Source: Ruditapes philippinarum (lineage: Eukaryota). Taken from it: a DNA stretch of 64,000 bases. Made by a program: the position numbers and the translations under genes. How positions within the stretch are numbered: the stretch's first letter is position 1; the number at the start of each line of letters is the position of its first letter. The stretch spans positions 186,001 to 250,000 of the forward strand of contig NW_026857770.1 of the NCBI RefSeq assembly GCF_026571515.1. Reading direction: 5' to 3'. Positions 26,435 to 53,345 of the stretch are shown here, piece after piece. The notes under the pieces are model-generated. The model saw nothing but the letters and a program-made list of their open reading frames with translations, had not been told where the DNA came from and searched no databases.

Positions 26435-29400
26435 TTAATATGACATTACTTTAAGTTCAATATCAGATTTTCCAATGAGATCATCTCTTAAAGTAAGATT
26501 TCCAGATATGCCTAAAAGTCCAGATGATACACGGTTTGAATGTGTGAAATAATGTATGTCATTGTTTTGCTCTGCTTGGGGATGATATAGTCTGCTTTTC
26601 AGAGCATCAGCTATCCATTTCTTTGCAAAACTTAATTTCTTTGATAGCTGTTTTCTCTTCATGCATACAGCAATAGTAAATAATATGATTGCAATAATAA
26701 ATAGCCATTTGACAATAAAGCCTGCAGATCCAGAATGTTTTTGTGATGATTCATTATTGGGAACGTCACCAGTAGTAACATCATTGCCCAGCAGAGATTG
26801 GTGAAAAACTGCAAGAAAGAAAAAAGAAAACAAAAATTGTCAAAATTCTTTCAAGGAAGATATCTTTTTAATCTCCTGCAAACGTTTGAATGTTTTATTT
26901 GGTTTTTCAACGCACCAACACAATATTAAGGTCATATTGCGTCGGAACAGGAAAAATCATAATGGCGAACACCTAATGTTAAAAACTTAAAGCAACACCA
27001 GGGTAATCTTAAAGCAAACCACCTCCCCTGCTGGATCTAAGTGATGCATTGACTCTGGCCATAACACCTTGTTAATGTGTTCAAACATTATTGTAGCTAT
27101 TTGGGTGTCACATGCCGCTTTTAACGTAATGGTACATAGGTGTGACATTTTAAGTTACAATAACATCGTCGTATGAATTTGACAATGGCTTCATTTTTCA
27201 AAACTCTATATTACATTCCTTTTTTATCTTTTAAATGAGAAGTCTTGCTTAAGTCGGTGCTAGGAACGAGGAAAGTAGATTGCATTTAACACTGCCATCC
27301 ATGAACAAGCTAAATCAAACCGATCTTACAATAATTTCATTTTTGCGGTTTTGATTTTACGGTTTTGATTTTACGGCTTCCAATATAACTACTTGATTGA
27401 AAATGAGCTGAAATTTATATTTGATTATCTTTTAAATGAATAAATGAGTGTGTTTTTTTCTATTTATCAATTCATTTAACGATAACTGTATTTTATATGC
27501 ACGACATTCAACCTTTACTGTTTCAGTTAGATTTACAATAAATCTGTGAAATTGGTTGGTGCGGATACTTAAAGTAAATAAGAAAAGATAAGTAAAATAA
27601 ACTCACATGGGCATGCATTGACGCAATACTCTGTTTGTCTCTTGTAGGTACTTGTACATATGTACGTGCATGCATTACATCTGTTCCTATCACTTGACCA
27701 GTACATGTCAGTATCACAGACAAATAGGGAATCTAATTATGAAACCATGTAAAGTATTAGATATTAGGTTTCCAATATATTTATCTGTTATCTTTGACAG
27801 AAAAGTTTTTAAAAATGCAAATAAAAAAACAAAAAAACCACACAAGTGAAAAATGTCACCAAAACCTTTAACCTTACAATATGCAGGAGCATTATTTGAA
27901 TAACATTGAATTAAAGATTTTAAAAAACGAAAAAATGTTAAGAAAATGTCATCAAAACTTAAACCTTTGTATTATTTACATGAGCTTTATTTGAAAATCA
28001 ATGATATAGGTTATATTGACTGCTCTTGTTCAACAAAGAGAATCATTTAATCTTAATAATTTTTACTTTCATTATGAATCCAATATAATAGTCACCTTGA
28101 CAAGACCTGGCCAGTATAACATTCTTTGTTTTCTCTATTTCGTCTTCGCTTCTACTATCCCATACAACAAAATGTTGTGCATTGCTTGCAAGTTTTACCC
28201 ATGATTCTGCTATACTTGTATTTACTTCTGCAAAGATCACAAACGTTTTCATTTTCCTGAGCTCTTCAAAACCATTTTCTTTATCGTGTATTGCAGTTTT
28301 GCTATCGACTAGCAGATACACAATTTGTGCGTCAATTGAATTACTTCTATGGTAGTTTGAGATTGTCATTCGTATTTTGTCTGTATAAGAGGATGCATGA
28401 TTTGAAGTGTTTCCAGACACATGTACAATTTTGTCTCTCCAATTAGTATTGCCGTTTCGTTTCCTAAAAGGCAGTGTTATATCATCTTTAGCGCCAATTG
28501 TTACAATAGATACACATGTGTTTTCAGGGAATTCACTTATTAACATTATCAACAATCTCATCTGTTGAAAAAATGAAGTATCTTCTCCACTACCCATGAA
28601 CCACATGATATGAGCGCTATACGGGTTACATATTAACTCCTCATCGTCCTCCTCAGTACCTGACAGACAAAAACGTTAATGTTTATTGTTTAGAATAAAT
28701 TTTATATATAATTTAGCTTTTGGAATCCAATTCGATAATGAGTTGTACGAAATTTGTGTTAAAAGATGTGTCATGAGCAATAACTCTTCCATGCTTTTAA
28801 AAATATGTAGGACGTGACTTTCGAAAATCTTTGATATCTTAACCAAGGTTCACATAGTTCATTTCTGTTAGTTTTCATATTGAATTCTTCCCTTTCAATT
28901 TCTGAGATCTGTTTTTAGATAAATGAAAAACCAAGTGTGCTATATATAGGTTTAATAGCGCATTCTTTAATATAAAAACAGTGGGTATTGATTCTTTTTG
29001 TATGTTTGACATAGCGCCGAGGAATTCGGCTATCGTATTTAACTATTGTCAAGGCGTGTTTTATTTCATTTTATACGTGTAAATGAAATATTGAGAAATA
29101 CAGATGAAACTAAATGCGTTTTTTATTTTCAACATTTTCTCGAGATTTATTTTTCACTGCAGTGAAACATATTTTCCGTCTTTTCACTCGTGTCTTGCCG
29201 AACAACTTTCTTCTAAATTCAGTCAATGCACAAAATTTAGAGAGGGGGGGGGGGGTTCTTTCGAATTGTAAAGTAAAAAAAGAGAATAATGTATATTATA
29301 AACAGAAAATTCAAGTTTTTTTTCTAAAAATACAGGATTTATCTTCATTTTGTGGTACGAAAATTAGAATATTTCACTCGTGGCTACCACCACTCATGAT

Positions 29401-29587
29401 TTTTTTTCATTTTTCATACAACTCAATGAAACTAAATCCTGTTTTTTATAGATCAAACTTGAATATCCTCTTTGTATTATTTGTCTTTTAAATCGACAAG
29501 TGGAATAAATATACCTGAACTTGTATTCACATGTCCTAATGTAATTAAAGTCACAACTGCTGTATGAACAAACACAGTGAATTTCAT
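26435..29587 (-). CDS. Type I receptor copy A: signal peptide + vWA-like + TACI/Grindelwald-type TNFR CRD + TM + cytoplasmic tail (378 aa)
   Basis: Exons 29515-29587 (MKFTVFVHTAVVTLITLGHVNTSS), 28096-28659 (564 nt, CNPYSAHIMWFMGSGED...ILARSCQ), 27607-27732 (CDTDMYWSSDRNRCNACTYICTSTYKRQTEYCVNACP) and 26435-26808 (TM WLFIIAIILFTIAVC then KRK). All introns are GT-AG, phase 1, and the frame is open. Confidence 0.85.
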
Positions 29588-30966
29588 TTTATCTAATAAC
29601 TTATATATCTATATCGAAATAATATTTATCCGTACTGGCATACGAGTAGTTCCCATACAAAATCGATATTGAAAATTATTTATTACGTAACAATATTGAT
29701 TTCATTTAACGTGTATGCAAAACACCTGAATGAAAGAATGGTATATAATGGCGTGCCTTCATTTTTTTTATTTGACCTTGAAAAGGGTATGATACAACAT
29801 TGAAACATGTTTATCTTAAAGATCATAAGGGACAATGATTAAATGGTAAACTTCCTCCCTTATTTCAGGCATTTTTGCCGACTTTGAAGATTTGTTTCAA
29901 CCTTTTCAAGAAATTGTGCCTAAGTGAAATTTACTTTCTGTTACAAAAAAAAATAATCATTGACTATTTTAGAGCTAAAGGTTTATAAAAAAAATTGCTA
30001 GTGTCTTGGTCGGATCGGAAATCAATTTCCTCCATTTGATCAAAATTATACAGAAGTCTTTTCTGAACAAAATTAGATTATGGTTCTATAGTTTACGGTT
30101 TTGTAGAAGGCACCAATCCAAAAACGGGAGCTGATACAAAGGGTGGTGAAAAGAGGAAAGAGACATGAAATAAGGAAAATGATAAGAGCTAAAAGGAATT
30201 AAATGGACAAGGTTTTGGTATAAGGAAAAGACGGGGACGCGCAATAGGACATAAGGGGAAATAAAAAGAAAATACTATCTGCTAACGGCAATTTAACAAG
30301 ATGACATAAAATAAACGTTAAGACATACAAAACATGTAACAATAAACAAGACATGCATGTGAAACAAGAGGAGGAACACAGGGGTAACAGGAACTGTCAG
30401 TGATAATAACACTAGTTGGAAGATTTAACCGGTTTAATGCGCACCAAACATCACTCTTTGTCATTATAGGCCTTTGTTTGAAAAGTAGCTAAAACAGATA
30501 CAAAATAAACACAGAATATATTCTTTAAATGGTGAAGAACATATTCCTCCACGGACTTACAATTATCCAAAAGTTAATACTAATTTTAAAGTTTGAACTT
30601 TGAAAAGATTACCATTTTTTCCAAATTGTTTTAAAGAAAATTATTCTAAAAACTAAAAAAGAACATAGAGATTTAATACACATTTCCCTTGACGGCAATT
30701 CAAAGGTTGGGTTCAGCTGTCTTATATCTTTCTGTCTCTTCGGGGTCGTTGATTTCAGCACTTAAGTGTTGAAGTTTTAAGTATTGCTCAAGTCGGTGCT
30801 ATCATTTAACTAGGTCTACAACAAGTTCGTTTCAGATTATTTTGCCTCTTTTAGAGCGTATAACGAGACCTAAAGATTTCAATCTAAACAAATAAAATGA
30901 CTTATGCAAATCCTACTTTAGTCATATAACGTATGTCGAGAGAGTAAACAAAGATCAGTGTTAAAC

Positions 30967-31044
30967 AATAGATAAATACAGAATCCCTAAAGAAAGCCCA
31001 ACACGGCAAAATTGAAAATGTTGCAGGCTCGGTTTGATTGAGCC
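30967..31044 (+). mobile_element. 78-bp hairpin-ended mini element identical to 62101-62178
   Basis: Exact repeat ending in the stem-loop ggctcggtttgattgagcc. A diverged third copy lies at about 63859-63924. Absent at the paralogous site near 43205. Confidence 0.7.
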
Positions 31045-31854
31045 AAAACATCAAATTATCAAATTTAGATTACAAATGGTGAACAGTTGCGCTATGTAAT
31101 TTCAAGTAACAAATATCGGCCTTTAGGCATATAAAAAGTTAAAAAACTATTACAGTTTTGGCTATTTATCTCTTTGCAATCCTTACCTGGCTAGCCTACG
31201 AATATGGGTCTTGCACCTGACATATGATGAGATCCTGTAGTAATTTCGATTTTTTTACCGGCATTTGATCTTGAAAATCGCTGTGTGAAAGACCTGGACC
31301 TTATACTTATCGGCTTATGCGGATGAACATTTAAGAACGTTAAATTTTTTCACTTGCAAACTATTTACAAGACCTGCACTATTTGATAATTCTTTTCCTC
31401 GTCCGCTTATCTTATTTTATGCAAAATTAACCACATAATAGAAGTTTAAAGAAATAAAACTTATAACATCAAGTTGCATACAAAACATTACGTCTCTGAT
31501 GTCTACTGAACAGACAGATATACAATGCGATTTACAATATTTCTTAAATCTGTAATAAACTTCCCGATTTCTTTAATATAATAAAACTATGTGTACTGTC
31601 ATCTTTGTGTGTGAATGGAAAACCAAAGTGTGCTATATATAGAGATTTTGGGATTCCAGTCTAGGGTGCATTTATACATATACTATCTCTTATAAAAAAG
31701 CTGAAATTATTAGTTACCTGACTTGGTTTCTAAAGAGGTTTGATAAAACGAGCATCAAGCTTATAGTTGCAATCAATGCTTTAAAGGGCGCCAAGATATT
31801 CGAATTTTTGTATTTATACTCTGTGTTTTCTTGCTTCATTTTTCAATAAAATAC

Positions 31855-31916
31855 CTGAACTTGTATTCACATGTCCAAATGTAATTAAGATCACAACTGT
31901 TGTATTAATCAAACAG
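31855..31916 (-). pseudogene. Orphan, ATG-less copy of the receptor signal-peptide exon
   Basis: Encodes LINTTVVILITFGHVNTSS followed by a CAG|GTAT donor, homologous to 29515-29587. Flanked by relics of intron 1 (e.g. aagtgtgctatatatag near 31625). Confidence 0.7.
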
Positions 31917-32365: not shown

Positions 32366-34850
32366 AAGAATCAAATTTGAGGAATTATGTTGGCAAGCAT
32401 AACACTATCAAAGCACGTTCAATGAAAAATTATAATAAGGATGATTTCCAGCAATCTTTACTTGCAGTTGACTGGTCTCCTGTATTATTATGTGACTGTG
32501 TATCTGAAGCTTGGAATCTTTTTATTAAATAAATCTATTTTTCTAAATGTTGTTGATAACATTGCTCCTGTTAGGGAAATGCGTATTAAACAACGTATTG
32601 AAACATGGATTAGTCCAGAAATTTTACAATGTTTAAATGATAGAGATAAAGCTTTTCATTTGTATAGAAAGAATAAAACTGATGAAAATTTTGAGAATTT
32701 CAAAACATATAGAAATAGAGCTAATGAACTTATTTTTATGGCGAAAAAGAACCATTTTAATAATTCATGTGACAATCATAAAAATGATTCAAATACCTTA
32801 TGGAAATCCCTGAAGGAGCTTGGTCTACCTTCTAAAAAGGACAATACATCTTGTAAGATTAATATTGGATTAAAAATAGGTGATGAAATTTGTTTTGATA
32901 AACAAAAGGTTGCTAAAGAATTTAACAATTTCTACTGTAATGTTGCATCTTCTTTTTATTTATCAAAAAGAATTATATTTAATAATTTTTTCTTTTTCAT
33001 TGATGTCTGAAAAAAGTGTAATTAAGTATTTGAATAAACTAGGTTCAAACAAATCCACTGGTCTGGTGGTATTCCTTCTTGTTTTGTTAGAGTTAGCGCA
33101 TCTATTATAGCCTTTCCTTAAACCGTATTATAAATTTGTCATTGATACAAGGCACAGTACCTGATAATTTGAAGGCAGCAATAGTTGTTCCTCTTCAAAA
33201 AGAATGACAAAACTGAAGTTGGCAACTACAGGCTGTATCCATATTAAGCATTGTTTCAATTTTTTTAAAAGGGTTGCTTATGATCAGATTTCTTCCTATC
33301 TTAAAGAAATGGACATATTATATAAATTTCAATCATGATTTAGAGGTGTTTTTCCACAGACACTTGTCTTACACATCTATCTGATTACATTAAGTTGCAT
33401 ATGGATAAAGGTAATCTTGTATGGATATTCAAAAAGCATTTGACACAGTGGACCACTCAATCCTTTTAATGAAATTAGAAGTCATTTGTCTTAGTACTGA
33501 TGTTTTACAATGGTTTAGGTCATTTCGGTCTGATAGGCAACTTGTTGATGTATCTGGTACTTTTTCCTCACATGAAAGGGTTACCTGTGGTGTTCCCCAA
33601 GGGTCTATCTTGGGACCATTATTGTTTTTAATTTATGTAAATGATATGCAGGCTGTTGTTAAAAATAAACTTCTTCTTTATGCTGATGATTCTGCTATTC
33701 TTGTTACAGGTAAAAATAGGTCATCTATTGAAAAAGAACTGACAGATGAACTAAATTCTGTCAGTCAATGGTTAATTGACAATAAACTTTCCCTTCACTT
33801 AGGCAAAACAGAGACAATCTTATTTGGCTCTAAACATAGGTTAAAAACAGGTTCATCTCTTCATGTCAGTTGTAAAGGGACTGATATACAGTCAACTTCT
33901 AATGTCAAATATCTAGGTGCAACACTTGATCAGTCTCTCTCCGGTGAAGCAATGGCAAGTTCTATTATTAAAAAGGCCAATGCAAGGTTAAAGTTTCTGT
34001 ATAGAAAACGTGATTATCTCACTTTTCACACTAAAAAACTTCTGGTTATGGCCCTCATCCAATGTCATTTTGATTATGCATGTTGTTTCTGGTTTCCTGG
34101 GGTTACTAAATACTGGAAAGATAAACTCCAAGTCACAAAAAATAAATTGATAAGATTTGTTCTAAATCTTGGTTATATGTCACATATTGATAATGAACAC
34201 TTTAAAATTTTAAATTGGCTACCTGTCCAGAAAAGAGTTGATCAAATCATTCTATGTAATGTTTTTAAAATAAAACATGGACTTGCCCCTGAATATATGG
34301 GAGAAAACTTTATTCCATTAGATTCTGTTCATACATACAGGACCAGGTCAAGTGAAAGCGGTTGTTATATGCTACCTAAGGTCAAAGGTTTCGGATCAAA
34401 GTCTTTTGCTTATAATGGATGTGTATTGTGGAATAAACTACCCTCTTCTATTAGGATGGAATCAAAATTATACAATTTTAAATTATCTGTTAAAAAACAT
34501 TTACTTAATGGGTAATTATCTCTTTTAAGGGTGTCTATCCTCTAGTCTTAATATTTATTATTTTTATTAATTTATTTTAATTTGAAAATTTTATGTATAC
34601 TTTTGTCTTTCTTTAATTTAAAACTTTGATAAGTCATTTTCATGCCTCTCTTTGTCAAAACCATCAGTATCTAAGGACCACAATGGAAATAAGAGATTTA
34701 GTTCTCTTTTTTGTGTTATCCTTGGTATGATGTTTTTGATATGGTGCATTTCTTTACATTGATATTTGTTTTTTATTGTTTTATCATGTATTGGATATGT
34801 TTTTACCATGTTATTTACTGAATACTGAAATAAATCTATCTATCTATCTA
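32366..34850 (+). mobile_element. 5'-truncated, frameshifted non-LTR retrotransposon (CR1/L2-like)
   Basis: RT ORF 33421-34515 with KAFDTVDH, GVPQGSILGPLLF and LYADDS. Upstream broken ORF pieces at 32441-33110. 3' UTR ends in aataaa plus a (tcta)n tail. Confidence 0.9.
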
Positions 34851-35996
34851 AGATGAATTCATATTTCTAGACTACTCGTATTGTGTACAAACAATTTAAA
34901 TCGCCTTAAATAGAAAGAAAGTATGTTATGTGATGTCTTTTAGACTTGATTTGATAAAAAAATGCATTTTTAATCCTTTAAATGTATACACATGTCTATG
35001 TAATATACCTTAATATATCAGTCTAATTTAAGAATTGTCATATCTTTAATGAGGTGTTCCCAAATTTGTTTATAAATTAAAAAATGGGTTTGTGGGGTTT
35101 CAGTTTTAAAAAATCATCCCGAGGAAAAATTTGTTTTTCCCCAGGGGGTGCTTTATTACCCCGAAAAAATTTGGGGGAAAATCTAATTTGGGAAAATAAA
35201 TTTTAACTGTATAAAAATAAAAAGAGGGAAACCAATTAAAAAACTGTCGTACCTTTCCAAACTGTAGGCTAAATGGGACTTTTAGAACTTTTTTTTTTTT
35301 ATTTAAAAGTTTTTGATATCTTCCAGTAATTTAAACTAAATTAAACTGGGGTTTTTTTTTAAGGGAAAAAAAACAAATAAACCCATTCATTAAAAATTTT
35401 GGGTTCTTTAAATCTTTCCTTTGTATCCCAGAAAAATTTTTTCGATTGGTTTTTGACCCAAAAGCTTCTTTTTCAAATTTAAAAGACTTTTTCCCCAAAA
35501 AGGGCGTCTAGCAAACTCTGTCTGCAACGTTTCACTGATTAAATATGTTAAAAAATCCTTTGTTGTATGCTTTTATCGTCTGTATGTTCCAGTTTGACAC
35601 AAAATTATTCACATTACAATAACTTGAAAACGGATGTTTACTTTTTGACTATTCAAGAAAAAGATATTTTATACGCGAAAAGAACTCTAGGGTGCAAAGA
35701 ACTTAATTTTATGAGAGTTACTTTGGTGATGCCCTTGGCCCTAGGTGTTGCAACTTTAGTACCCTCTCTTGTCTGAAGCAATGCACAAAGGGACCTGAGG
35801 TCTTCTTCCACCATTATAATTTATCTAAATCAAGTCTTCATATAATATTTGCAGTTTTTGAAAAAAAGTGTATTCATTATTAAACACAAACGATGTACAT
35901 ACCAAACTGTAATGATGTGCATGTAAATTAAAAACATTCAGTAAGGATTTTATGGATTTCAAAAGATTTTTGAGATAACAATATTTTTCTCCAATG

Positions 35997-36149
35997 TTGA
36001 TGTCACAACAAAGGCAACAGCAACAACAATTTACAGGGGGATGTATCCGCCCCCGCCGCCGTCTTATTCCGACACGGATCCGGCATACCCACCAACTGCT
36101 TCATTTCCTGACCCAAGTGCACCCTCACCCCCATACTCCAAGGCCGTAT
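35997..36149 (+). pseudogene. Truncated, frameshifted duplicate of the 3' end of the 4-TM gene last exon
   Basis: Near-identical to about 25024-25178 (SQQRQQQQQFTGG...). Lacks the upstream part of the exon and has a 1-nt deletion (gggggcatg to gggggatg). Confidence 0.8.
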
Positions 36150-37374
36150 AAATTACTGTTTATTCAGGACTTGATACCATAAAAAAAACTTTAAAATGCT
36201 TTATCGTGTTATGTAAGTAAATGTGATAAAAATTGTTCTGTGATATCAATCAGGGTTGAGTTATGTGTTTGAAAACGCTTTTTTTTTAAATTCAGCCCTA
36301 CATGTTTTTGTATTTATTATCATTATTTTGTTCTAAAAAAAGGAGAGTATTGTGCAAATTAATAAACTTTGGATTTGTGACGCTTTTTTTAAAAATATTC
36401 TTGGGAAAAAAAAAATTTTTTTTTGATTTGGGGGGCCCTTTAAAAATTAAAATTTTAAAAAACAAACCTTTATCCGATTTTTACGGCCTGTTTTTTTTTG
36501 ATTTTTGGAAAACCGGGGGGTTAAACTTCTTAATAAAACATTTAAACATAGGATTATTTTGGAAAAATAATTCTTTCACCAAGGAAATATAGGGGGGGAT
36601 TTCCTCCGTTTTTCTTTGCTTTTTTGGAGGTTTTTCATGGTTTTTTACTTTGAATGGAAAATTTTAGGGGGAATTTAAAAAAAATTAAAAAATCTTTTAA
36701 AAGCCCATTTTTGGAAGGTAATTAGTCATTTTTTAATTTTTCCAAAAACATCATTTTTTTATTTTTTACAAACATTTATACATGTAATTAAAAACTTTTT
36801 TTTTAAATAGGCGAAGAAATAGACCGACTGAAATTTTTAATTATTTTAAGCCCTTTTTTAAAAGAAAAACAGAAATATACATAAATATAATGAATAATAA
36901 AATAATAATTATAGAAAAAAACTTGATCAAAATACAAGAAGTGACAAAAATAACACACTGGTACAGGCTTAATATGACCACTCTATGTGTCTGTATTTTG
37001 TAATTATATTCAATTATAAGGATTTTAATTGCTTTCTTTACTACTTAAGCAGATAAATATCACCAAGTAGGTTTATCAAACTACAAATTTAATGGTTTGA
37101 CCTTGCAAATAGAATTCAAAATGTACATGAAATAAGCATTTATTCGAGAGCAACTGAAAAGAAGGATAAGTTTACAAATTCTTTAAGAAAACTACTACGG
37201 TTTGCATGAAATCTACATATAAAATCATTCTTTTTCATCAAAAATGAAGAAAATAATAAAATTACTAAGCTTAATTTAGGACAAAATATTACACAGGTTA
37301 TGTAAATACTTTGTTATGATATTCCAGCTTTTCTCTTGATGGAACATCTGATGTAACGTTACAACCATTTTATT

Positions 37375-40300
37375 TTAATATGACATTACTTTAAGTTCAA
37401 TATCAGATTTTCCACTGAGATCATCTCTTGAAGTTAGATTTCCAGATATGCCTAAAGGTCCAGATGATACACCGTATGAATGTGTGTTATAATGTATGTC
37501 ATTGTTTTGCTCTGCTTGAGGATGATATAGTCTGCTTTTCAGAGAATCAGCTTTCCATTTCTTTGCAGAACTTAATTTCTTTGATATCTGTTTTCTTTTC
37601 ATGCATACAGCAATAGTAAATACTATGATTGCAATAATAAATAGCCATTTGAAAATAAAGCCTACATATCCAGAATGTTTTTGTGATGATTCATAATTGG
37701 GAAAGTCACCAGATTCATTATTCAGACCGTCACCAGTAGTAACATCATTGCCCAGTAGAGATTGGTGAAAAACTGCAAGAAAGAAAAAAGAAAACTAAAC
37801 ATTGTCAAAATGCTATCAAGGAACATATCATTTTAATCTCCTGCAAATGTTTGAATGTTTTGTTTGGTTTTACAGCGCACCAACACAATTAAGGTCATAT
37901 TGCGCCGGAACAGGAAAGATCATTATGGCTAACACCAAATGTTAACAACTTAAAGCAACACCAGGGTCATTTTAAAGCAAACCACCTCACCTGCTGGAGC
38001 TAAGAGATGCATTGACTGTGGCCCTAACACCCTGTTAATGTGTAGCCATGCCGCTTTCCGCGTAATGTACGTAGGTGTGACACTTTTAAGTTACAATAAC
38101 ATCGTCGTATGAATAAGACAATGGCTTTTTTAATACACTATATTAGATTCCTTTTTTATCTTTTAAATATTTTGTCTTGCTTAAGTCGGTGCTTGGAACG
38201 TGGAAAGTATAATGCATTTAACACTGCCATCCATGAACAGGCTAAATCAAACCGACCTTTCAGTAATTTCAATTTTGCGATTTTATTTTACGGTTTTGAA
38301 TTTACGGCTTTGATTGAAAATGAGCAGAAATTTATATTTGATTATCTTTTAAATGAATATTTTTTTTCTATTTATCAATTTATTTAACGATAACTGTATT
38401 TTATATGCATGTCATTCAACCTTTACTGTCTCAGTTAGATTTACAATAAATCTGTGAAATTGGTTTATTGCAGATACTAAAAGTAAATAAAAAAACGTAA
38501 AATAAACTCACATGGGCATGCATTGACGCAATACTCTGTTTGTCTCTTGTACGTACTTGTACATATGTACGTGCATGAATTACATCTGTTCCTATCACTT
38601 GACCAGTAATTGTCAGTATCACAGACAAACAGGGAATCTAATAATGAAACCATGTAAAGTATTAGATATTAGGTGTCTAATATATTTATCTGTTATCTTT
38701 GACAGAAAAGTTTTAAAAATGCAAATAAAAAAACAAAAACCACACAAGTGAAAAATGTCACCAAACCTTTAACCTTACAATATGCAGGAGCATTATTTGA
38801 ATAACATTGAATTAAAGATTTTAAAAAACGAAAAATGTTAAGAAAATGTCATCAAAACTTAAACCTTTGTATTATTTACATGAGCTTTATTTGAAAATCA
38901 ATGATATAGGTTATATTGACTGCTCTTGTTCAACAAAGAGAATCATTTAATCTTAATAATTTTTACTTTCATTATGAATCCAATATAATAATCACCTTGA
39001 CAGGACCTGGCCAGTATAATATTCTTTGTTTTCTCTATTTCGTCTTCGCTTCTACTATCCCATACGACAAAATGCTGTGTATTGATTGCAAGTTTTACCC
39101 ATGTTTCTGCTATACTTGTATTTACTTCTGCAAATATCACAAACGTTTTCATTTTGCTGAGCTCTTCAAAACCATTTTCTTCATCGTGTATTTCAGATTT
39201 GCTATCGACTTGGAGATACACAATTTGTGCGTCAGTTGATTTACTTCTATGGAAGTTTGAGATTGTCATTCGTACTTTTTCTGTATACGAGGTTGCATGA
39301 ATCGAAGTGTTTCCTGACAATTGTAAAATTTTGTCACTCCAATTAGTGTTTCCGCCTTGTTTCCTAAAAGACAGTGTTATATCATCTTTAGCGCCGATTG
39401 TTATCATAGATACACTTGTGTTTTCAGGGAATTCACTTATTAACATTACCAACAACCTCATCTGTTGAAAAAATGAATTATCTTCTCCACTACCCATGTA
39501 CCACATGAAAAGAGCGCTATAAGGGTTACATGTTGATTCCTCGTCGTCTACCTCAGTACCTGAAAGCCAAAAACGGTTATTGGTTATTGTTTAAAATAAA
39601 TTTCATATATAATTTAGATAATTCGATAATGAGTTGTATGAAATTTGTGTTAAAAGATGTATCATTAGCAATAACTCTCTCAGTCTTTTAAAAAAATGTA
39701 GGACGTGAAATCTTTGATATCTTAACCAAGGTTTACAGAGTTCATTTCAGACTTTTTTCTAATCATTCTGTCTATTTTAGAGAGATTAACGAGCTTTAAA
39801 GTTTTCAGTTTGAACTTATATATTGACTAAAGAACATCCTTATTTAATCATTTCAATTTCTGAAATCTATTGTTAGATAAATGAAAAACCCAGTGTGCTA
39901 TATATAGATATCGGAATTCCAGTTTAATAGCGCATTCGTGTATGCTTTAAATAGCGCCGAGCCATTCGACTATCGTATTTAACTGTTGTCAAGGCGTGTT
40001 TTATTTCATTTTATACGTATAAATGAAATATTGAGAAATACAGATGAAATTAAATGCGTAGTTCATTTTCAACATTTTCACGAGATTTTGTTCACTGAAA
40101 CATATTTTCCGTCTTTTCACTGGTGTCTTGCAGAACAACTTTTTTCTAATTCAGTCAATGCACAAAATTTAGGGAGGGATGGGGTCTTTCAAATTGTAAA
40201 GTATAAAAAGAGAAAAATGTATATTATAAACAGATAATTCAAGTTATTTTTCTATAAATACATGATTTATCTTCATTTTGTGTAATAAAATTGTCATATT

Positions 40301-40497
40301 TCACTTGATTTTTTTTCATTTATCATACAACTCAATGAAATTAAATCCTGTTATTATAGATTAAACTTGAATATCCTCCATGTATTATTTATCTTTTAAA
40401 TCGACTAGTTGAATAAATATATACCTGATATTGTATTCGCATGTCCTAATGTAATTGAAATCACAATTGTTGTATGAACCAATACAGTGAACTTCAT
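37375..40497 (-). CDS. Type I receptor copy B: signal peptide + vWA-like + TNFR-type CRD + TM + tail (386 aa)
   Basis: Exons 40425-40497, 38996-39559, 38512-38637 and 37375-37772. Same phases as copy A; first three exons the same length; the last exon has 24 extra nt in the stalk. Confidence 0.85.
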
Positions 40498-40919
40498 TTT
40501 ATCTAATAACTTTCATATTAATATCGAAATAATATTTATCCGTACTGGCATGCGAATAGTTCCCGTACAAAATCGTAGCTATATTGAAAAATTTATATTA
40601 CGTAACAAAAAATTCGGCTCGTCACACCAATTGTGGAAATCCCAATATATTCTAATTATAGAAGGGTATCGGAACTACCCATTTTTTATGAAAAGAAGTA
40701 GTTCCCGTACATTTAGTATCACCCATCATTATTATACAATAATGCATTATCGCATGGTTTGGAACTTTTTCTTTAATTGTTCTTACTATCTCATTATACT
40801 CAGTACACTTTTAAACTGTATTGGTACACTTTTAAACTGTATTGATATATAGCAGTACAGTTTTTCATTGATTCATATAGGCCAAAATCTCAACTGCTAT
40901 ATAGCAGTTGAGTTCTTTT

Positions 40920-40955
<36 letters not shown>

Positions 40956-41421
40956 CGTTTTTTTTTTCTCGTTTTTTATCAGTATAGTTTTTTCACTGAG
41001 GTTCCAATTGTAGCAGCGGTTACGAACATTCAGTAGCAAACTAAACAAAAAAGAAGCATAAGTAAAAAAGAAAATTAATGAAATGAATTATTCTTATATA
41101 ATTATGCAACTGCTGAAATCAAAAGGTACATCCGCGACATGATTTTTTTCCACTGAAGAAACCCTTAAATCTTGAATCCGAATAACTATCAGTTAACTAT
41201 CAGTCTCTATCATTGGACGTTGTTTTAAGATTGCAATATTATTTATAGTTGTAAAGGTAGCTTACGACATTAGCTGGTATCTTGGAGTGAGAAGGTAAAA
41301 AAGTGAAAGAGCACAAGAGATAGATAAATGCACGTTTTTGTTTGTTTGTTTGTTTTTTTTTTGTTTTTTTTTCTGATTTCTTTTATAAAAAAATGAAAAT
41401 GCAAAAAAAACAGTTACAGTA

Positions 41422-41596
41422 CAGTAAATGAAACTCGTAAGTTACAGGGGTATAACACTGGCTGGGGCGACATCTCGGGATGTTTCTGAAAAAAGAAATT
41501 GTCTCGGCCGAACGGTCTCGACAATTTTTAGCAAAAACACCCCTTGATGTCGCCCCAGCCAGTGTTATATCCTCGTAACTAACTCGTTTCATATAC
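41422..41596. mobile_element. Palindromic MITE-like element
   Basis: Inverted arms tataacactggctggggcgacatc and gatgtcgccccagccagtgttata. Absent from duplication unit 1. Confidence 0.7.
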
Positions 41597-44402
41597 TACA
41601 ACTATTACATATCATTCGTATCTTTTCAATGATAATCTTTGAAGAAACCATTTTTCATGAGGTACATAGGTATGCCATTTAGGAATAAAGTATGGACTAC
41701 AACGTCACATGAAATTAATGTTAGCTTATAGACTTCTGCTCTCGGTTTTATTTAACGTATGCAAAACACTTGAAAGAATCGTATATCATCACACTGTTTA
41801 TTGTAGTATTTTTTAAATTTATTAGAATACATTTGAAATTGAAATTTTATGTTCAATCAAAGTTCTGTATAGTACAAACGGTCATCTAGTTCGCCTCCAA
41901 CCTTGAATTGTACATAAACATTTGATCTTGAAAAGTTTATGATACAGCATCTTAAATATTTAAAGCGTAAATGGTAAACTTCCTCTCTTTACTTTTTACT
42001 TTTTGTATTTGTGCCGAATTTGAAGATTTGTAACAACCCTTCTTCGAGAGCCAACATCAAACACAAAGTGTGCCTCAGAGAAATATACATTATCTTACAA
42101 AAATAAAGACAAACATTAAATATTTTAGTACTATAGGTTTATACATGTTTTTTATTGTCTTTGTTTGATCGGAAATCAAATTCCTCCATTTTATCAAAAT
42201 TATATAGAAGTCTTTTCTGAACAAAATTAAATTATGGTTCTAAACTTTACGATTTTGCTTAAGGCACCAAACCAAAAACGGACACAAAGCGCGGTGAAGA
42301 GAGGAAATGGACCTGAAATAAGGACAATGATAAAAACTAAAAGGAATTAAATGGACAAGGTTTTGGTGTAAGGAAAAGACGGGGCACAAAATTGGACATA
42401 AGGGGAACTAAAAGGGAAATACTTACTGCTAACGGTAATTTGACAAGATGTGACATTATAAAACGTTTTGACATACATACAAAACAGGTAACAATAAACA
42501 AGACATACACGTGAAACAAGAAAAGATACACAGAGGGTACCGCCTAGGAACTGTCAGTAGTTATAATACTGCTGGGAAGTTTTAAAGCGCAAAAATCATC
42601 ACTCTTAGTCATTATAGGCATTCGTTTGAAAAGTAGTTTAAAAAGATACAAAATAAATACAGAATATATTCTTTAAATGTTAAGAACATATTCCTCTATT
42701 GACTTACAATTCTCCAAAAGTTAATATTAATTTCAAATAAAAAATATTTTTAACTTTCAAAATATTACCATTTTTTCCAATTTTCAAAAAGAACAATTTT
42801 AAAAAACTAAAGAAGAACATGAAGATTTAATACACGTTTCCCTGGGCGGCGATTCGGAGGTTTTCAAACTAGGTGCAGCCGTTTTATATTTTTCTGGTTA
42901 TTCGGGGTCGTTGATGTTGCAAATTGTATCGCTCAAGTCGGTGCTAGGTTTGAAATCCTTAATATTATTTAACAAGGTTTACATCAAGTTCATTTTCAGA
43001 TTGTTTTCGAATTATTTAGCCTCTTTTAGAGTGTTAAAGATTTCAGTTTGAACTTTTAAAATGACTTATGCAAATCCTACTTTAATCATATAAAATTCCT
43101 TTCGTACAATTGCATATGAATTCAAGGTAAAAAAGGCCCATGGCCCAAAATATTAAAGGAATGTATGTTCTGTTTCATCCCAGAGAGTTAACGAAGATTA
43201 GTGTTGAAAATAGCATCTAGTTCGGATTACAAAATGGTGAACATTTGCGCTATGTAATTTCAAAGTAATATTAAAAATAATCGACCTTAAGCATATAAAA
43301 AATAATACATTTTTGGTTTTGAATCTCTTTGCAATCCTGGCCGAGCTAGCCTACGAATATGGGTCTTGCACCTGACTTACGGTGAGATCCTGAAGTATGT
43401 CAAACTCATTCTTATTGCCGTTTGGTCTTGAATATCGCTGTGTGAAAGACCTGGACCTTATACCCATCGGCTCATCCAGGTGTACATTTAATAATTAAAA
43501 TAAGATCCGTATAAAATTCTAGACTTGCAAACTATTTACCAGGTCTGCACTATTGGATCATTCTTTTGATCGTCTGCTTATCTTATTTAACCATAATGGA
43601 AGTTTAAACAAATGAAACTTATAACGTCACGTTGCATACAAAACGCAATGTCTCTTATGTCTATGAACAGACAGACAGGCAATGCGATTAACTATATTAT
43701 TTAAATCTTTAATAAACCTCCCCATTTCTTTAATATTAAATGAATCTATTTGTATTGTTATCTTTGTGTGTAGTGTGCTATATATAGATGTTGGGATTTC
43801 AGTCTTTATATGGATAATAAACATTTACTTTCTCTTTAAATTAATGGTAACATTCTGTGACATAGTTCCCTAAAGAGGTTTAATTAAAGGAGCATGAAGC
43901 TTATCCATTGTAATTAATGCGTAAAGGAATTGATTCTTTATTTGTGCTTTAAAAAGCGCCACGATATTTGACTTTTTGTATTTGTACTATTGTTGTGCAG
44001 CCGAAAAACCAAGAAATTCTTTAACGAAAAACTTATGAATAAATATGCATGCTTTTAACTTTTAAAATTATCTAAAAAGACTATATGTTCAAAAATGTGT
44101 GAAATTTCAAATATGTTTAAGTTACAAATAGTTAATGTTTTTATTACAGATGTCTAATAAATAATTATGTAACCGGAAGATTAAATGTGGCTTTTCCTCT
44201 TTGTCCAATCAAATGTGCTAAAAGTTTTATTATACTCAGGTGATAATGTCGATTTAGCTGTCTGTATTTATTAACTTGTTAAACCTATGACTGATAAAAT
44301 ATCCATGTGGTGATTGTTGTAAAGTAAAATTATGAATCCCATGTTGCTATGCTACCTTATTTTGTATTTAAACTGATAGGTCATTTTGTATTTTAAGAAG
44401 TT

Positions 44403-44984: not shown

Positions 44985-45017
44985 ACCTGAACTTGTTATC
45001 ATGTGTCCAAATGTAAC
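44985..45017 (-). pseudogene. Second, more decayed orphan signal-peptide exon relic
   Basis: aatacctgaacttgttatcatgtgtccaaatgtaa matches the 3' half of the leader exon and its donor. It is the paralogous position to 31855 in the duplicated block. Confidence 0.55.
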
Positions 45018-50845: not shown

Positions 50846-53345
50846 TCAATTGTTTTGCTGTTCATTGAGCTCACTGACCTCGTCTTCTGTGAATTTTCTT
50901 CTTTCTTTAAAACTCCATACATAGTGTTTGAAGCTCCATAACTTTTCCTTTTTCTTGTATACGAGGGCAACTGTGGCTAATACTAGTATACATACAATGC
51001 CAACCAGGGTAATAATTAGCCAAGAGTTATTGTCGGATGCTTCCCTAGCATGTTCTTGTAATGGCTCACTTGTGTAATCCTTGTCCTTGTTAATATTATT
51101 TGCAAGCTTATATTTGTGAAAAACTGCAAAACAGAGAAAAATATATACAAAACATATAATTGCAATTATCTAAAAAGCCTTAATATTTTTCTGTAAAAAT
51201 AAATAAAATCATACGATTTCCTTTGATATAATAAAGCAATTCTCAAACATCCACTTAAATCATGACATGATTACCTGGAGTGGTCCTTTTGAAACATTTA
51301 AGTCAGCAAAGTTACATGAAAATTGCAGACTCGGTTTGAATGGGTCTGTACATGATAAATAATGAAAAAGTGCTATATCCCTCAAGCGCCCTACCACTGG
51401 CTTGAGTGGAACTCAATTTTCAACACTTAAATGTGCTGGAATCAATGATCCGAAGGACCGGAAAAATAAAACAAAGCTGAAGTGAAGTACTTTTACAGCT
51501 GCCACAAGGGACTTGACACCTGCTGTTGTAGAAATATCTGAAAACTAAACAATTTTACTGTTGTTGTTTTTATGTTTGCTTTGTTTTGTTCGGTCAATTG
51601 ATGAATCAAATAACTTGACAGGTAAATATAAAAAATGAAATGTAAGTAGACATACATGGACACGCATAAAAGCAATACTCCGGTTGTACCTTGCAGGTAC
51701 TGGAACATATATATGTGCATGCATTACATCCTTTCCTGTCACTTGACCAGTACATGTCAGTGTCGCAGACAAATTTTGAATCTATAAAAGAAACCATGTA
51801 CAATGTGTTGTGTGTCAATATTTATCAATCTCTTTAGAAAAGAAAGTGAGAAGGTTGCTAAGTGTTTCAAGCAAATTATAAACAGCAATAAAAATTAAGA
51901 AACAACTTTTCTACTCATTTCCCAAATTAAAGTACTTTTATAATACTAATAATAATGTTCACCTTGACAGGACCTGGCCAGAATTATTTCCTTCGTTTTA
52001 TTGACATCTCCTGTTATACTGTCCAATGCGATAAAATAATTTTCATTGCTAGCAAATTTTAACCACGTGTGTGATCTATTTTCCGTTTGAATTTCACATA
52101 ACACAACAAACGTTTTCTTTTTCCGAAGCTCTTTAATACCATTGTTTCCTACATCGCGTATTACAGTTTTGCCATTAACTAGAAGATAAACAAGTTCTGC
52201 TTCACTAGAATTAGTCTTATGGTATAGTATTGCCTTTTGTATTTCTGTGTAAGGTAATGTATGATTCGATGCCGTTCCCGGCACATGATGTAAAATTTTG
52301 TCTCTCCAATTCGTAATTCTATCTTGTTTTCTAAACTGTAGTCTTATATCATCTTTAGCGCCAATTGTGACGATTGATACACTTGTGTTTTCAGGAAAGT
52401 CACTTATTAACACTACCAACAATCTTCTCTGTTGAAAAAAGGAATTATCTTCTCCGCTACCAGTGTACCATATGATAAGAGCGCTATACGGGTTACATGA
52501 TAATTTCTCATCGGCATCCTTAGTGCCTAAAAGAAAATTGCAAAATGTTTCTTTATTAATAAGCTAAACTAAACTAACTTGCAATAGATTCGAAATCTCA
52601 CATTATATTAAAAGATTATGAAAATCACCCCAATCTTTCTGTCTGTCAATTCTTGAAATCGCTAGTATTAATTTAGAATAATAATTTTGTTTACAAAATC
52701 AAAATTTAAGTGACTTGCCTTTATAAAACTTTGTGATATAGTTCTGAAGAATCGTGTTTGCAAGAAAACTGTTGTTAGGCGTATAAGTGGCACAAATTCA
52801 GAACTTAAATGTGTATTGGTCATACATAATAGTATTTCTGTTCACAGATAAACGTCAAATTTCGATTTGCTGAGTTACGGTAAACTTTAAGAATATTGTT
52901 ACCCCCTAATGATAACTAGACATACAGATTTACTAAATTCTTAAATAAACTGTATAACTTTTTAACTAGATCTGGGAATCTATGTTTAGTTAATGGAAAA
53001 CTAAGATTGTGCTATAAATAAAGATGTTGGGATCCTTAAAAATTGCACTTTTTTAAGAGAAAGTTTATATCCATATAAAACAGTAGTAGATTCTATTATA
53101 AGTTAGTTAGCAGTTCTTTTAAACGATTTATATGTAATAAGCATCAAAATAAATAAATGATAATTAACACTTTAAAAATGTTATAGAGATCTTGAGCTTT
53201 AGTTAGCGCCACGACATACGACTTTTTAAAAAGTTTCTTTTTGTTGAAAATTAACTAGTGGAAATAATGTACCTGAACTTATATTCATATTTCCTAAAGA
53301 AATTAAAATCACAACTGTTGTACCAATCAATACAGTAAACTCCAT
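50846..53345 (-). CDS. Type I receptor copy C (older paralog): signal peptide + vWA-like + TNFR-type CRD + TM + different short tail (346 aa)
   Basis: Exons 53273-53345 (MEFTVLIGTTVVILISLGNMNISS), 51963-52526 (564 nt), 51656-51781 (CDTDMYWSSDRKGCNACTYICSSTCKVQPEYCFYACP) and 50846-51123 (TM WLIITLVGIVCILVLATVALVY then KKKEK; TGA at 50846-50848). Confidence 0.8.

What the first reader, a model, noticed from the sequence alone, without database searches (positions are those of the whole stretch)
26435..53345. Tandem family of vWA + single TACI/Grindelwald-type TNF-receptor CRD membrane receptors
Seen: three intact 4-exon genes, visible only as fragments in the ORF track. Each encodes a signal peptide, a 188-codon phase 1-1 exon with vWA-like alpha/beta pattern, a 42-codon phase 1-1 Cys exon (C-x4-YW-x6-C-x2-C-x3-C-x10-C-x3-CP), a TM helix and a short basic tail. 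Known: this Cys/YW spacing resembles the short CRDs of TACI/BCMA and the single CRD of Drosophila Grindelwald, which are TNF receptors without death domains. Inference: exon shuffling put a vWA sensor module in front of a TNFR-type CRD. I do not know of this architecture being described. It may be an expanding immune, adhesion or recognition receptor family.
Basis: partly seen in the sequence, partly recalled or inferred. Interest (0 to 1): 0.88.

Follow-up and report, generated by a model that had tools for sequence, protein, structure and literature searches.

The report
Clam vWA-plus-small-cysteine-domain membrane receptor cluster
Three neighbouring, intact and transcribed clam genes encode single-pass membrane proteins with a von Willebrand A head and a small six-cysteine module that resembles the TACI/BCMA type of TNF-receptor domain; the family is uncharacterised, seen so far only in venerid clams, and its function is untested.

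Summary
Three minus-strand, 4-exon genes lie exactly where stated. All introns are GT..AG and phase 1. The exons are: signal peptide, 564 nt, 126 nt, then TM helix plus tail.

Contigs of one public run carry the e1-e2 and e3-e4 joints of gene 1. dN/dS is below 1 in the two domain exons.

The 188-codon exon is a vWA fold. The AF2 model has pLDDT 81. Foldseek hits are almost all vWA domains, and VIA Z is 16-17 to integrin I domains, ANTXR2, VWF A2 and collagen VI. Its MIDAS metal site is degenerate.

The TNFR-type reading of the 6-Cys exon is only partly supported.
- For: the Cys spacing fits. A protein language model places two divergent paralogues nearest TACI-CRD2 and BCMA clusters. TACI is the only PDB sequence the family profile touches, at a non-significant E of 5.
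- Against: the Pfam TNFR_c6, TACI-CRD2 and BCMA models do not hit it. The AF2 model of the exon is poor (pLDDT 55) and finds no fold.

The family has at least 18-22 loci in this genome. Named relatives are 'uncharacterized' proteins of Mercenaria and Ruditapes. Tails carry no known signalling domain.

Most likely these are lineage-specific adhesion or recognition receptors. TNF binding is untested, though the genome holds at least 91 TNF-domain exons.

This stretch was also noted in another first-stage reading (s1-804415).

The parts
29515..29587 (-). gene c1 exon 1: ATG plus signal-peptide-like hydrophobic segment (24 codons + 1 base)
   Evidence: X1 contig runs from exon 2 across the intron into 29512-29649, so the 5'UTR is at least 62 nt.
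28096..28659 (-). gene c1 exon 2: 564 nt, phase 1-1, vWA-fold domain with degenerate MIDAS and conserved Cys near both ends
   Evidence: AF2 pLDDT 81.4, pTM 0.82. Foldseek hits are vWA domains, E 6e-8 to 4e-6. VIA Z 16-17. X1 contig covers 28096-28656.
27607..27732 (-). gene c1 exon 3: 126 nt, phase 1-1, six-Cys module C-x4-YW-x6-C-x2-C-x3-C-x10-C-x3-CP
   Evidence: Atlas nearest clusters are TACI-CRD2 and BCMA. Only PDB profile hit is TACI, E 5.1. Joint 26808|27607 seen in X1.
26435..26808 (-). gene c1 exon 4: juxtamembrane linker, TM helix, K/R-rich stop-transfer stretch, about 65-aa tail, stop codon
   Evidence: X1 contigs cover 26334-26808.
40425..40497 (-). gene c2 exon 1 (signal peptide)
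38996..39559 (-). gene c2 exon 2 (vWA), 82% aa identity to c1
38512..38637 (-). gene c2 exon 3 (six-Cys module), 95% aa identity to c1. The adjoining intron 2 is 98.9% identical to that of c1, a likely gene-conversion tract.
37375..37772 (-). gene c2 exon 4 (8-codon insertion in the linker, TM helix, tail, stop)
53273..53345 (-). gene c3 exon 1 (signal peptide)
51963..52526 (-). gene c3 exon 2 (vWA), 57-59% aa identity to c1
51656..51781 (-). gene c3 exon 3 (six-Cys module with one extra Cys), 78% aa identity to c1
50846..51123 (-). gene c3 exon 4 (linker, TM helix, KKKEK, about 37-aa tail unrelated to c1/c2, stop TGA)
31855..31915 (-). relic of an exon 1: 90% identical to c1 exon 1 bases 14-73, splice donor kept, ATG lost
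25024..31787 (.). duplication unit holding c1. It pairs with 35998-43927 (holding c2) at 75-90% identity.
35998..43927 (.). duplication unit holding c2

Best explanation
The region is part of a tandem cluster of a lineage-restricted family of type I membrane glycoproteins. The family has so far been seen only in venerid clams.

Each protein is built as: signal peptide; one vWA-fold domain with a degenerate metal (MIDAS) site and a conserved Cys near each end; one small six-cysteine module just outside the membrane; one TM helix; and a short, fast-changing cytoplasmic tail with no recognised signalling domain.

Shown: the gene structure, splicing at two of the three junctions, purifying selection, the vWA fold, family size and taxonomic range.

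Inferred:
- The vWA head is the ligand-binding part. It would bind a protein or matrix ligand without a canonical metal bridge, as the MIDAS-less VWF A domains do (my recollection).
- The two terminal Cys clamp the domain, as in VWF A1/A3 (my recollection) and PTMP1.
- The six-Cys module is a TNFR-like hairpin plus helix-loop-helix unit of the TACI/BCMA/Fn14/Grindelwald kind. It would act mainly as a rigid stalk or a second contact site.
- Signalling, if any, needs a partner protein.
- The likely role is cell-surface adhesion or recognition, possibly immune.
For: - Gene models: three copies, all phase 1 with GT..AG introns.
- Splicing: spliced contigs in run X1 at e1-e2 and e3-e4, with a contig end at the e2 3' boundary. 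12 of 15 variants listed for e2 positions on contig record 5 in run X1 match the 97.5%-identical copy on contig C12003, so the transcript comes from an allele or near-twin.
- Selection: dN/dS 0.45-0.51 (vWA), 0.15-0.34 (Cys exon), 0.3-1.2 (tail).
- vWA fold: AF2 pLDDT 81.4, strand/helix order b-a-b-b-a-a-b-a-b-a-b-a. Foldseek top 50 are nearly all vWA domains. VIA Z 15.6-16.8, rmsd about 2.9 A over about 170 of 187 residues. Pfam VWA hits 3 of 21 family members on their own, best E 4.2e-5. The family profile's best PDB hit is the two vWA domains of mussel PTMP1, E 0.016, with the C-terminal Cys aligned.
- MIDAS: DxSxS is replaced by (F/Y)(M/T)GSGED in the window copies. The strand-D Asp is Asn in most members.
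- Cys module: W and six Cys are invariant across seven paralogues of this genome, and five Cys are invariant and one nearly so across relatives from other clams. The spacing C-x3-C-x(7-10)-C-x3-C of the last four Cys equals the C2 helix-loop-helix consensus given for Grindelwald, C-x3-C-x11-C-x3-C (PMC8024323). Atlas nearest clusters are TACI-CRD2 and BCMA for two paralogues. TACI is the only PDB sequence hit.
- Family: at least 18 vWA exons and 22 Cys exons in the genome; at 13 of the 22 a vWA exon was found in the fetched flank, and at 5 more one lies within about 4 kb by coordinates. Only 21 hits (one of them spurious) among 1.84 billion representative proteins; the named ones are from Mercenaria mercenaria and Ruditapes philippinarum.
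- Tails: no Pfam domain, no TRAF-type motif in any tail.
Against: - No ligand, tissue or induction data exist. Raw RNA reads of X21 cover introns and exons alike at depth 2-7 with no joints, and X24 shows no coverage of the gene, so expression looks low or restricted.
- The e2-e3 junction of the window genes is supported only by a contig end and by homologous proteins, not by a bridging read.
- The TNFR-like reading of the Cys module fails every significance-bearing test. Pfam TNFR_c6, TACI-CRD2 and BCMA give nothing. The AF2 model is poor (pLDDT 55) and finds no fold. Atlas scores under 0.9 are leads only.
- The disulfide clamp and metal-independent binding are inferred, not modelled at atomic level.
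Confidence: 0.6

Rival explanations
1. They are true, non-canonical TNF receptors or co-receptors. The single TACI/BCMA-like CRD would dock in the groove of one or more of the clam's many TNF-family trimers. The vWA head would add a second specificity or cluster the receptor.
For: - Cys spacing and aromatic pair as in single-CRD TNFRs.
- Atlas nearest clusters are TACI-CRD2 and BCMA, and TACI is the only PDB profile hit.
- The genome holds at least 91 TNF-domain (PF00229) exons over the Pfam cut-off. Only 26 TNFR_c6 matches on about 14 contigs were found, so receptors may be missing from the canonical count.
- The Cys exon is the most constrained part of the protein (dN/dS 0.15-0.34).
Against: - No significant sequence or structural match to any TNFR domain.
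- The hairpin tip lacks the Asp-x-Leu-type motif that TACI, BCMA and Fn14 use (PMC8024323; alignment).
- Tails have no death domain and no TRAF-type motif.
- Part of the c1-c2 conservation of the Cys exon is gene conversion, since the neighbouring intron is 98.9% identical.
- No binding test was run.
Confidence: 0.12
2. The six-Cys module has no evolutionary or structural link to TNFR domains. It would be a lineage-specific disulfide-rich stalk whose spacing is convergent. The proteins would then be plain vWA adhesion or matrix receptors, analogous to ANTXR1/2 (vWA, small stalk domain, TM helix).
For: - All profile and fold searches for TNFR failed.
- The language-model search can be driven by Cys spacing alone, and its scores are below the 0.9 mark.
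- ANTXR1/2 vWA domains are among the best structural matches of the head.
Against: - Two paralogues only 31% identical give the same three top clusters.
- The one PDB sequence reached by the family profile, out of 177,635, is TACI.
- The spacing fits both the one-disulfide hairpin and the C2 consensus.
- The low-confidence AF2 model shows a hairpin then a C-terminal helix.
Confidence: 0.25
3. The copies are decaying duplicates or a mis-assembled or mis-modelled artefact, with no working product.
For: - There is an exon-1 relic between c1 and c2.
- One near-copy on C12003 has a stop in exon 2.
- Tails evolve almost neutrally.
Against: - All 12 exons are open, with intact splice sites.
- dN/dS is below 1 in both domain exons.
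- Spliced transcripts exist.
- Full-length relatives are found in two other clam species.
Confidence: 0.03

Closest known systems
Anthrax toxin receptors ANTXR1 (TEM8) and ANTXR2 (CMG2)
   Same: Type I single-pass proteins with an N-terminal vWA head, a small membrane-proximal domain, a TM helix and a cytoplasmic tail. Their vWA domains are among the best structural matches (Foldseek E about 3e-7; VIA Z 15.7-16.7).
   Different: ANTXR has an intact MIDAS, an Ig-like stalk and a long conserved tail (my recollection of the literature). Here the MIDAS is degenerate, the stalk is a 6-Cys module and the tails are short and variable. Sequence identity is only 7-13%.
VWF A1/A3 domains and mussel byssal PTMP1 vWA domains
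   Same: Same fold. PTMP1 is the best PDB hit of the family profile, and its C-terminal Cys aligns with the family's. VWF A1/A3 lack a working MIDAS and carry a disulfide joining the N and C ends (my recollection), which is the arrangement proposed here.
   Different: Those are secreted multidomain matrix or plasma proteins with no TM helix and no TNFR-like module.
Single-CRD TNF receptors: TACI CRD2, BCMA, Fn14, Drosophila Grindelwald
   Same: One roughly 40-residue CRD next to the membrane in a type I protein. Shared features are the hairpin with an aromatic pair, the C-x2-C link and the last four Cys spaced C-x3-C-x(n)-C-x3-C (C2 consensus in PMC8024323). Nearest language-model clusters and the only PDB profile hit also point here.
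   Different: - No significant HMM or fold match.
- No Asp-x-Leu tip motif.
- No TRAF motif or death domain in the tail.
- A 187-residue vWA domain sits N-terminal to the CRD, which I do not know from any TNFR.
- Grindelwald has 8 Cys (X2 + C2 modules); this module has 6.
Matrilins and integrin beta subunits (vWA-type domain followed by Cys-rich repeats)
   Same: A vWA-type domain followed by small disulfide-rich modules.
   Different: Their modules are EGF-type (my recollection), with a C-x-C signature that is absent here. Matrilins are secreted, and integrin beta has four I-EGF repeats and a conserved tail.

Membership tests
von Willebrand factor type A (vWA) domain superfamily | Rossmann-like alpha/beta fold with the vWA order of strands and helices | tested here: met
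   AF2 pLDDT 81.4. Foldseek top hits are almost all vWA domains. VIA Z 15.6-16.8 over about 170 of 187 residues.
von Willebrand factor type A (vWA) domain superfamily | Sequence-profile match to Pfam VWA (PF00092) | tested here: inconclusive
   The window copies give no hit at E <= 10. 3 of 21 family members hit PF00092, best E 4.2e-5. The family profile hits the PTMP1 vWA domains at E 0.016.
von Willebrand factor type A (vWA) domain superfamily | MIDAS metal site (DxSxS, Thr, Asp); defines the metal-dependent subset, not the fold | tested here: not met
   The DxSxS position reads (F/Y)(M/T)GSGED in c1-c3. The Thr site is not conserved. The strand-D Asp is Asn in most members.
TNF receptor superfamily (CRD of TACI/BCMA/Fn14/Grindelwald kind) | Profile match to TNFR_c6, TACI-CRD2 or BCMA-Tall_bind | tested here: not met
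   No hit at E <= 10 on any copy or paralogue. Genome-wide scans with PF00020, PF09305 and PF09257 do not land on the family's exons. The family profile against PDB hits only TACI, at E 5.1, which is not significant.
TNF receptor superfamily (CRD of TACI/BCMA/Fn14/Grindelwald kind) | Cys spacing of a one-disulfide hairpin module followed by a two-disulfide C2-type module | tested here: met
   C-x(10-12)-C-x2-C-x3-C-x(7-10)-C-x3-C across the family. C2 consensus is C-x3-C-x11-C-x3-C in PMC8024323. The aligned part of TACI 1xu1_R shows C-x2-C-x3-C-x6-C-x3-C.
TNF receptor superfamily (CRD of TACI/BCMA/Fn14/Grindelwald kind) | Three-dimensional CRD fold (hairpin plus helix-loop-helix) with the expected disulfide pairing | tested here: inconclusive
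   The AF2 model of the exon has pLDDT 55, showing a hairpin then a helix. Foldseek and VIA-wide give no meaningful match.
TNF receptor superfamily (CRD of TACI/BCMA/Fn14/Grindelwald kind) | Binds a trimeric TNF-family ligand | not tested
   At least 91 candidate TNF-domain exons in the genome. No pair could be singled out, so no co-fold was sent.
TNF receptor superfamily (CRD of TACI/BCMA/Fn14/Grindelwald kind) | Tail with a death domain or TRAF-binding motif | tested here: not met
   No Pfam domain in exon 4 of any copy. No [PSAT]x[QE]E or PxExx[aromatic/acidic] motif in any cytoplasmic tail; the only match, in c3, lies outside the membrane.
ANTXR-like vWA receptors | vWA, Ig-like stalk, TM helix and conserved ANTXR tail | tested here: not met
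   The vWA fold is shared, but the stalk is a 41-residue 6-Cys module and no ANTXR Pfam domain is found. This is an analogue, not a member.

The most novel reading that the evidence does not exclude
The family is a new class of invertebrate TNF-ligand receptors or co-receptors. A single TACI/BCMA-like CRD would be fused by exon shuffling to a MIDAS-less vWA head, and the family would have expanded alongside the clam's very large TNF ligand repertoire (at least 91 TNF-domain exons). It would supply part of the 'missing' receptors of bivalve TNF signalling.
Probability: 0.12. Interest if true: 0.8.

Novelty: new variant of a known kind. Interest (0 to 1): 0.5.

Why it matters
Bivalves have hugely expanded immune and TNF-ligand gene sets, but few matched receptors are known. 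This is an expressed, selectively maintained and tandemly expanding receptor family. It joins a vWA head to a possible TNFR-type module, a combination that I do not know from the literature and that carries no Pfam annotation in any relative.

Even if the Cys module is only a stalk, the family is a clean example of module shuffling on phase 1-1 exons followed by lineage-specific expansion. It also adds a new kind of MIDAS-less vWA cell-surface receptor. If the module does bind TNF ligands, it would open a testable route into invertebrate TNF signalling.

Tried and rejected
- **Pfam on every exon of the three copies at E <= 10.** Only noise: Fer4 hits from the CxxCxxxC pattern in an extracellular module, and TM_ErbB1 from the TM helix plus basic stretch.
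- **phmmer of exons 2 and 3 against PDB sequences.** Nothing.
- **AF2 of the Cys exon alone with 15 rows.** pLDDT 55. Foldseek pdb gave E of 9 or worse, and VIA-wide gave Z of 2.2 or less to unrelated folds. These are uninformative, not evidence against a TNFR fold.
- **Genome-wide scans with Pfam TACI-CRD2 and BCMA.** Best hits lie elsewhere, contain stops and are below cut-off. None lies at a family locus.
- **P0015 (3537 aa, 12 matched stretches).** It is a bacterial SpaA-repeat surface protein. Rejected as spurious.
- **P0021's GYF domain.** Probably a fused gene model. Not followed up.
- **The search for homologous proteins with the family alignment.** Returned only 5 proteins, all already in the family.
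- **Paper searches.** Searches for the relatives' LOC names and for vWA+TNFR in bivalves found nothing specific.
- **Complex prediction was not used.** With at least 91 TNF-domain exons and no reason to prefer one, the prior for any single pair is well under 1%. A pass would more likely be a false positive.
- **Spliced proteins were not built.** All searches and folds were done exon by exon by reference, or with natural full-length database relatives.
- **N runs.** The two N runs (1676-1836, 54567-54710) were left as they are.

Full report
**1. What is in the sequence**

The window is AT-rich eukaryotic DNA (GC about 0.30). Reading the minus strand of 26300-29700 and translating candidate exons gives a complete gene, c1.

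| Exon | Coordinates | Content |
|---|---|---|
| e1 | 29587..29515 | ATG, 24 codons + 1 base, hydrophobic core |
| e2 | 28659..28096 | 564 nt |
| e3 | 27732..27607 | 126 nt |
| e4 | 26808..26435 | 2 bases + 123 codons + TAA |

blastn and tblastn of these exons against the window find two more full sets.
- c2: 40497..40425, 39559..38996, 38637..38512, 37772..37375.
- c3: 53345..53273, 52526..51963, 51781..51656, 51123..50846. The last exon was read by eye.

All nine introns start GT and end AG, and all junctions are phase 1. Exons 2 and 3 are therefore symmetric 1-1 exons of 188 and 42 codons in every copy. No exon contains a stop.

Summing the separate exons, the products would be about 378, 386 and 346 residues. 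I did not build or search joined sequences.

Other features:
- Exon 1 has a signal-like hydrophobic stretch.
- Exon 4 has one strongly hydrophobic 19-23 residue segment (Kyte-Doolittle 2.7-3.1) followed by KRKQ or KKKEK.
- Several N-x-S/T sites lie in exons 2 and 4 before the helix, as expected for an ectodomain.

The finding's coordinates (26435-53345) are exactly the stop of c1 and the ATG of c3.

**2. Is it real?**

*Duplication.* c1 and c2 sit in an approximately 7-8 kb duplicated unit (25024-31787 against 35998-43927, 75-90% identity). The two units are separated by a LINE reverse-transcriptase fragment (33421-34515, Pfam RVT_1). c3 is older: only its exons still align.

*Selection.*

| Exon | dN/dS |
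|---|---|
| e2 | 0.45-0.51 |
| e3 | 0.15-0.34 |
| e4 | 0.3-1.2 |

Both domain exons are under purifying selection, while the tail is nearly free. Intron 2 of c1 and c2 is 98.9% identical, against about 91% for introns 1 and 3. The near-identity of their Cys exons, noted in earlier finding s1-804415, is therefore at least partly a gene-conversion tract and not selection alone.

*Transcripts.* Runs of the same species label were found.
- Contigs of run X1 carry the joint 26808|27607 (skips 798, ends CT..AC) with 64 letters on the exon 3 side.
- They also carry the joint 28656|29512 (cut +3, which gives 28659|29515) with 138 letters running 62 nt upstream of the ATG.
- The same 700-nt contig begins at 28096, the predicted 3' end of exon 2, after 4 letters that do not lie on the intron.
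- Spliced joints show that this 'RNA?' run is RNA, or at least processed.
- 12 of the 15 variants listed for e2 positions on contig record 5 in run X1 are those of a 97.5%-identical copy on contig C12003. The transcript therefore comes from an allele or near-twin of c1.
- Raw reads of X21 cover introns and exons evenly at depth 2-7 with no joints, and X24 shows no coverage of the gene. Expression is low or restricted in those samples.

The e2-e3 joint is supported indirectly. Natural relatives read ...SC(Q/K/R)DS(R/K)L.CDT..YW... across it, which is what the predicted join gives.

**3. The large exon is a vWA domain**

- Pfam finds nothing on the window copies.
- phmmer against 1.84 billion representatives finds only 21 proteins.
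- With these as alignment A1, AF2 gives pLDDT 81.4 and pTM 0.82, with the order b-a-b-b-a-a-b-a-b-a-b-a.
- Foldseek against PDB returns almost only vWA domains: VWF A1, ANTXR1/2, PTMP1, collagen VI, ITIH1, integrin aL, and the vWA-like part of the Entamoeba lectin. E is 6e-8 to 4e-6 and TMq is 0.6-0.69.
- VIA-align gives Z 15.6-16.8 at rmsd about 2.9 A over about 170 of 187 residues, to integrin I domains, CMG2, VWF A2, collagen VI, PTMP1 and TRAP.
- At sequence level, 3 of 21 members hit Pfam VWA on their own (best E 4.2e-5). The family profile's best PDB hit is PTMP1's two vWA domains (E 0.016), with the family's C-terminal Cys aligned to a PTMP1 Cys.

The MIDAS is not kept:
- The DxSxS position is (F/Y)(M/T)GSGED in c1-c3.
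- The Thr position varies.
- The strand-D Asp is Asn in most members.

A Cys about 10 residues into the domain and another at its last-but-one residue are conserved. The two ends of a vWA fold lie side by side, so a clamp disulfide as in VWF A1/A3 (my recollection) is likely but not shown.

**4. The small exon**

Across the window copies, seven paralogues of this genome and the clam relatives, the pattern is C-x4-(Y/F)W-x(4-6)-C-x2-C-x3-C-x(7-10)-C-x3-C(P/S). W and six Cys are invariant across the seven paralogues of this genome; across the wider set with other clams, five Cys are invariant and one is nearly so.

*For a TNFR-type CRD:*
- The last four Cys have the spacing of the C2 helix-loop-helix module described for Grindelwald (C-x3-C-x11-C-x3-C). 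That module is also said to occur in Fn14 and in TNFR1 CRD4. Grindelwald's overall topology is said to resemble BCMA, Fn14 and TACI CRD2 (PMC8024323).
- The aligned piece of TACI 1xu1_R shows C-x2-C-x3-C-x6-C-x3-C.
- In the ESM Atlas, the c1 exon is nearest to TACI-CRD2 (0.86, 172 shared features), then two BCMA clusters. A paralogue only 31% identical (L018) gives the same three (0.87, 0.83, 0.80).
- The family CRD profile reaches exactly one of 177,635 PDB sequences, TACI, but at E 5.1.
- The poor AF2 model still shows a hairpin followed by a C-terminal helix.

*Against, or inconclusive:*
- No Pfam TNFR_c6, TACI-CRD2 or BCMA hit at E <= 10 on any copy.
- Genome-wide scans with those three models do not land on family exons.
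- The AF2 model (pLDDT 55) finds no fold.
- Atlas scores below 0.9 are leads only.
- The hairpin tip has no Asp-x-Leu-type motif, and it is the most variable stretch of the module.

I put the TNFR-like fold at roughly 55-60%. Membership of the TACI/BCMA families proper is not shown.

**5. Family and range**

- In the window's own 1.4-Gb assembly there are at least 18 exon-2-like and 22 exon-3-like matches.
- At 13 of the 22 Cys-exon loci a vWA exon was found in the fetched 1.5-kb flank, and at 5 more one lies within about 4 kb by coordinates; the remaining four were not resolved.
- No Cys exon was shown to stand alone, so no donor gene is visible.
- A fourth, partial copy lies on the same contig about 16 kb beyond the window (contig C6257, 265933-266256).
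- Contig C12003 carries four copies, one with a stop. It may be the other haplotype.
- Named relatives are all 'uncharacterized protein LOC...' of Mercenaria mercenaria (several loci) and Ruditapes philippinarum, with no precomputed Pfam domain.
- The rest come from unnamed metagenome or Logan contigs. Two of these (P0017, P0020) are on contigs too short to hold introns, so they are probably transcripts.

**6. How it most likely works**

*Shown:* an expressed, constrained, tandemly expanding family of type I membrane proteins with a vWA head and a six-Cys membrane-proximal module.

*Inferred:*
- The head binds a protein or matrix ligand without a canonical metal bridge.
- The Cys module is a rigid TNFR-like stalk or a second contact site.
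- The short, variable, domain-less tails mean that any signal needs a partner. No death domain and no TRAF motif is present in any tail.

The closest working analogue is ANTXR1/2 (vWA, stalk, TM helix). The closest analogue for the stalk is the single-CRD TNFR group.

**7. The TNF question**

The genome has at least 91 TNF-domain exons above Pfam's cut-off. It has only 26 TNFR_c6 matches on about 14 contigs. That imbalance makes unrecognised receptors plausible, but it is context, not evidence.

I did not send a co-fold. With no reason to prefer one ligand, a pass would more likely be a false positive.

**8. Verdict**

- The vWA reading is confirmed.
- The TNFR-type reading is a reasonable but unproven lead.
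- 'Immune receptor' is speculation.

This is a new domain combination built from known kinds of module, in an uncharacterised and lineage-restricted family. Interest is moderate (0.5), and it would be high if TNF binding were shown.

Noticed in passing
window 30967-31044 (bin 30884-31074): A 78-nt core in the c1-c2 spacer has very high depth in all four runs (thousands in X1, X2 and X21). Both strands are covered. Loose ends lie on both sides, and there are 'goes back 75-78' and 'opposite strands' joints. It looks like the conserved core of an abundant, transcribed short repeat present in tandem or inverted arrays elsewhere. There is no Rfam match.
   Followed up: partly
window 28974-29355 (intron 1 of c1): A repeat inside intron 1 has contig depth of 500-2100 in X1 and X2 and raised depth in raw RNA reads. 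It is also present in c2's intron 1. There is only a weak, sub-threshold mir-4803-like Rfam hit at 29331-29443 (E 0.087, 25 bits against a gathering score of 90), probably chance.
   Followed up: partly
window 31855-31915: A relic of an exon 1 of the family (90% identical to c1 exon 1 bases 14-73). The splice donor is kept and the ATG is lost. It lies upstream of c1 at the edge of the duplication unit. A weaker 30-nt trace lies at 44987-45016.
   Followed up: partly
window 24756-25178 (+) and 35994-36182 (+): A Gln/Pro-rich open frame just downstream of c1, on the other strand. It is partly duplicated with the c1/c2 unit (25024-25361 against 35998-36344, 90% identity). It has no Pfam match and may be the end of a neighbouring gene.
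   Followed up: partly
window 32441-34515 (+) and 56740-62754 (-): LINE-type retroelement fragments. RVT_1 is found at 33421-34515. A run of broken open frames at 56.7-62.8 kb looked to me, by eye, like reverse-transcriptase and endonuclease fragments; the one frame tested there (60930-61412) has no Pfam match. The first fragment separates the c1 and c2 duplication units.
   Followed up: partly
G000 whole genome: There are at least 91 TNF-homology-domain exons over Pfam's cut-off, many in tandem arrays (for example on contigs C3465, C6470, C7629 and C7423). Only 26 TNFR_c6 matches were found. This is a very large TNF ligand expansion; some matches may be haplotype duplicates.
   Followed up: no
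G000 C12003:12142-44843 (loci L002, L003, L006, L007): A second four-copy cluster of the family. One copy is 97.5% identical in nucleotides to c1 exon 2 and matches the X1 transcript variants. Another has a TAA in exon 2. It is either the alternative haplotype, with copy-number and structural differences, or a recent segmental duplicate.
   Followed up: partly
P0021 (Ruditapes philippinarum XP_060552783.1): This 674-aa database relative carries two GYF-domain repeats after the TM helix (Pfam GYF, E 3e-34). It is most likely a gene-model fusion with a neighbouring gene, not a real tail.
   Followed up: no
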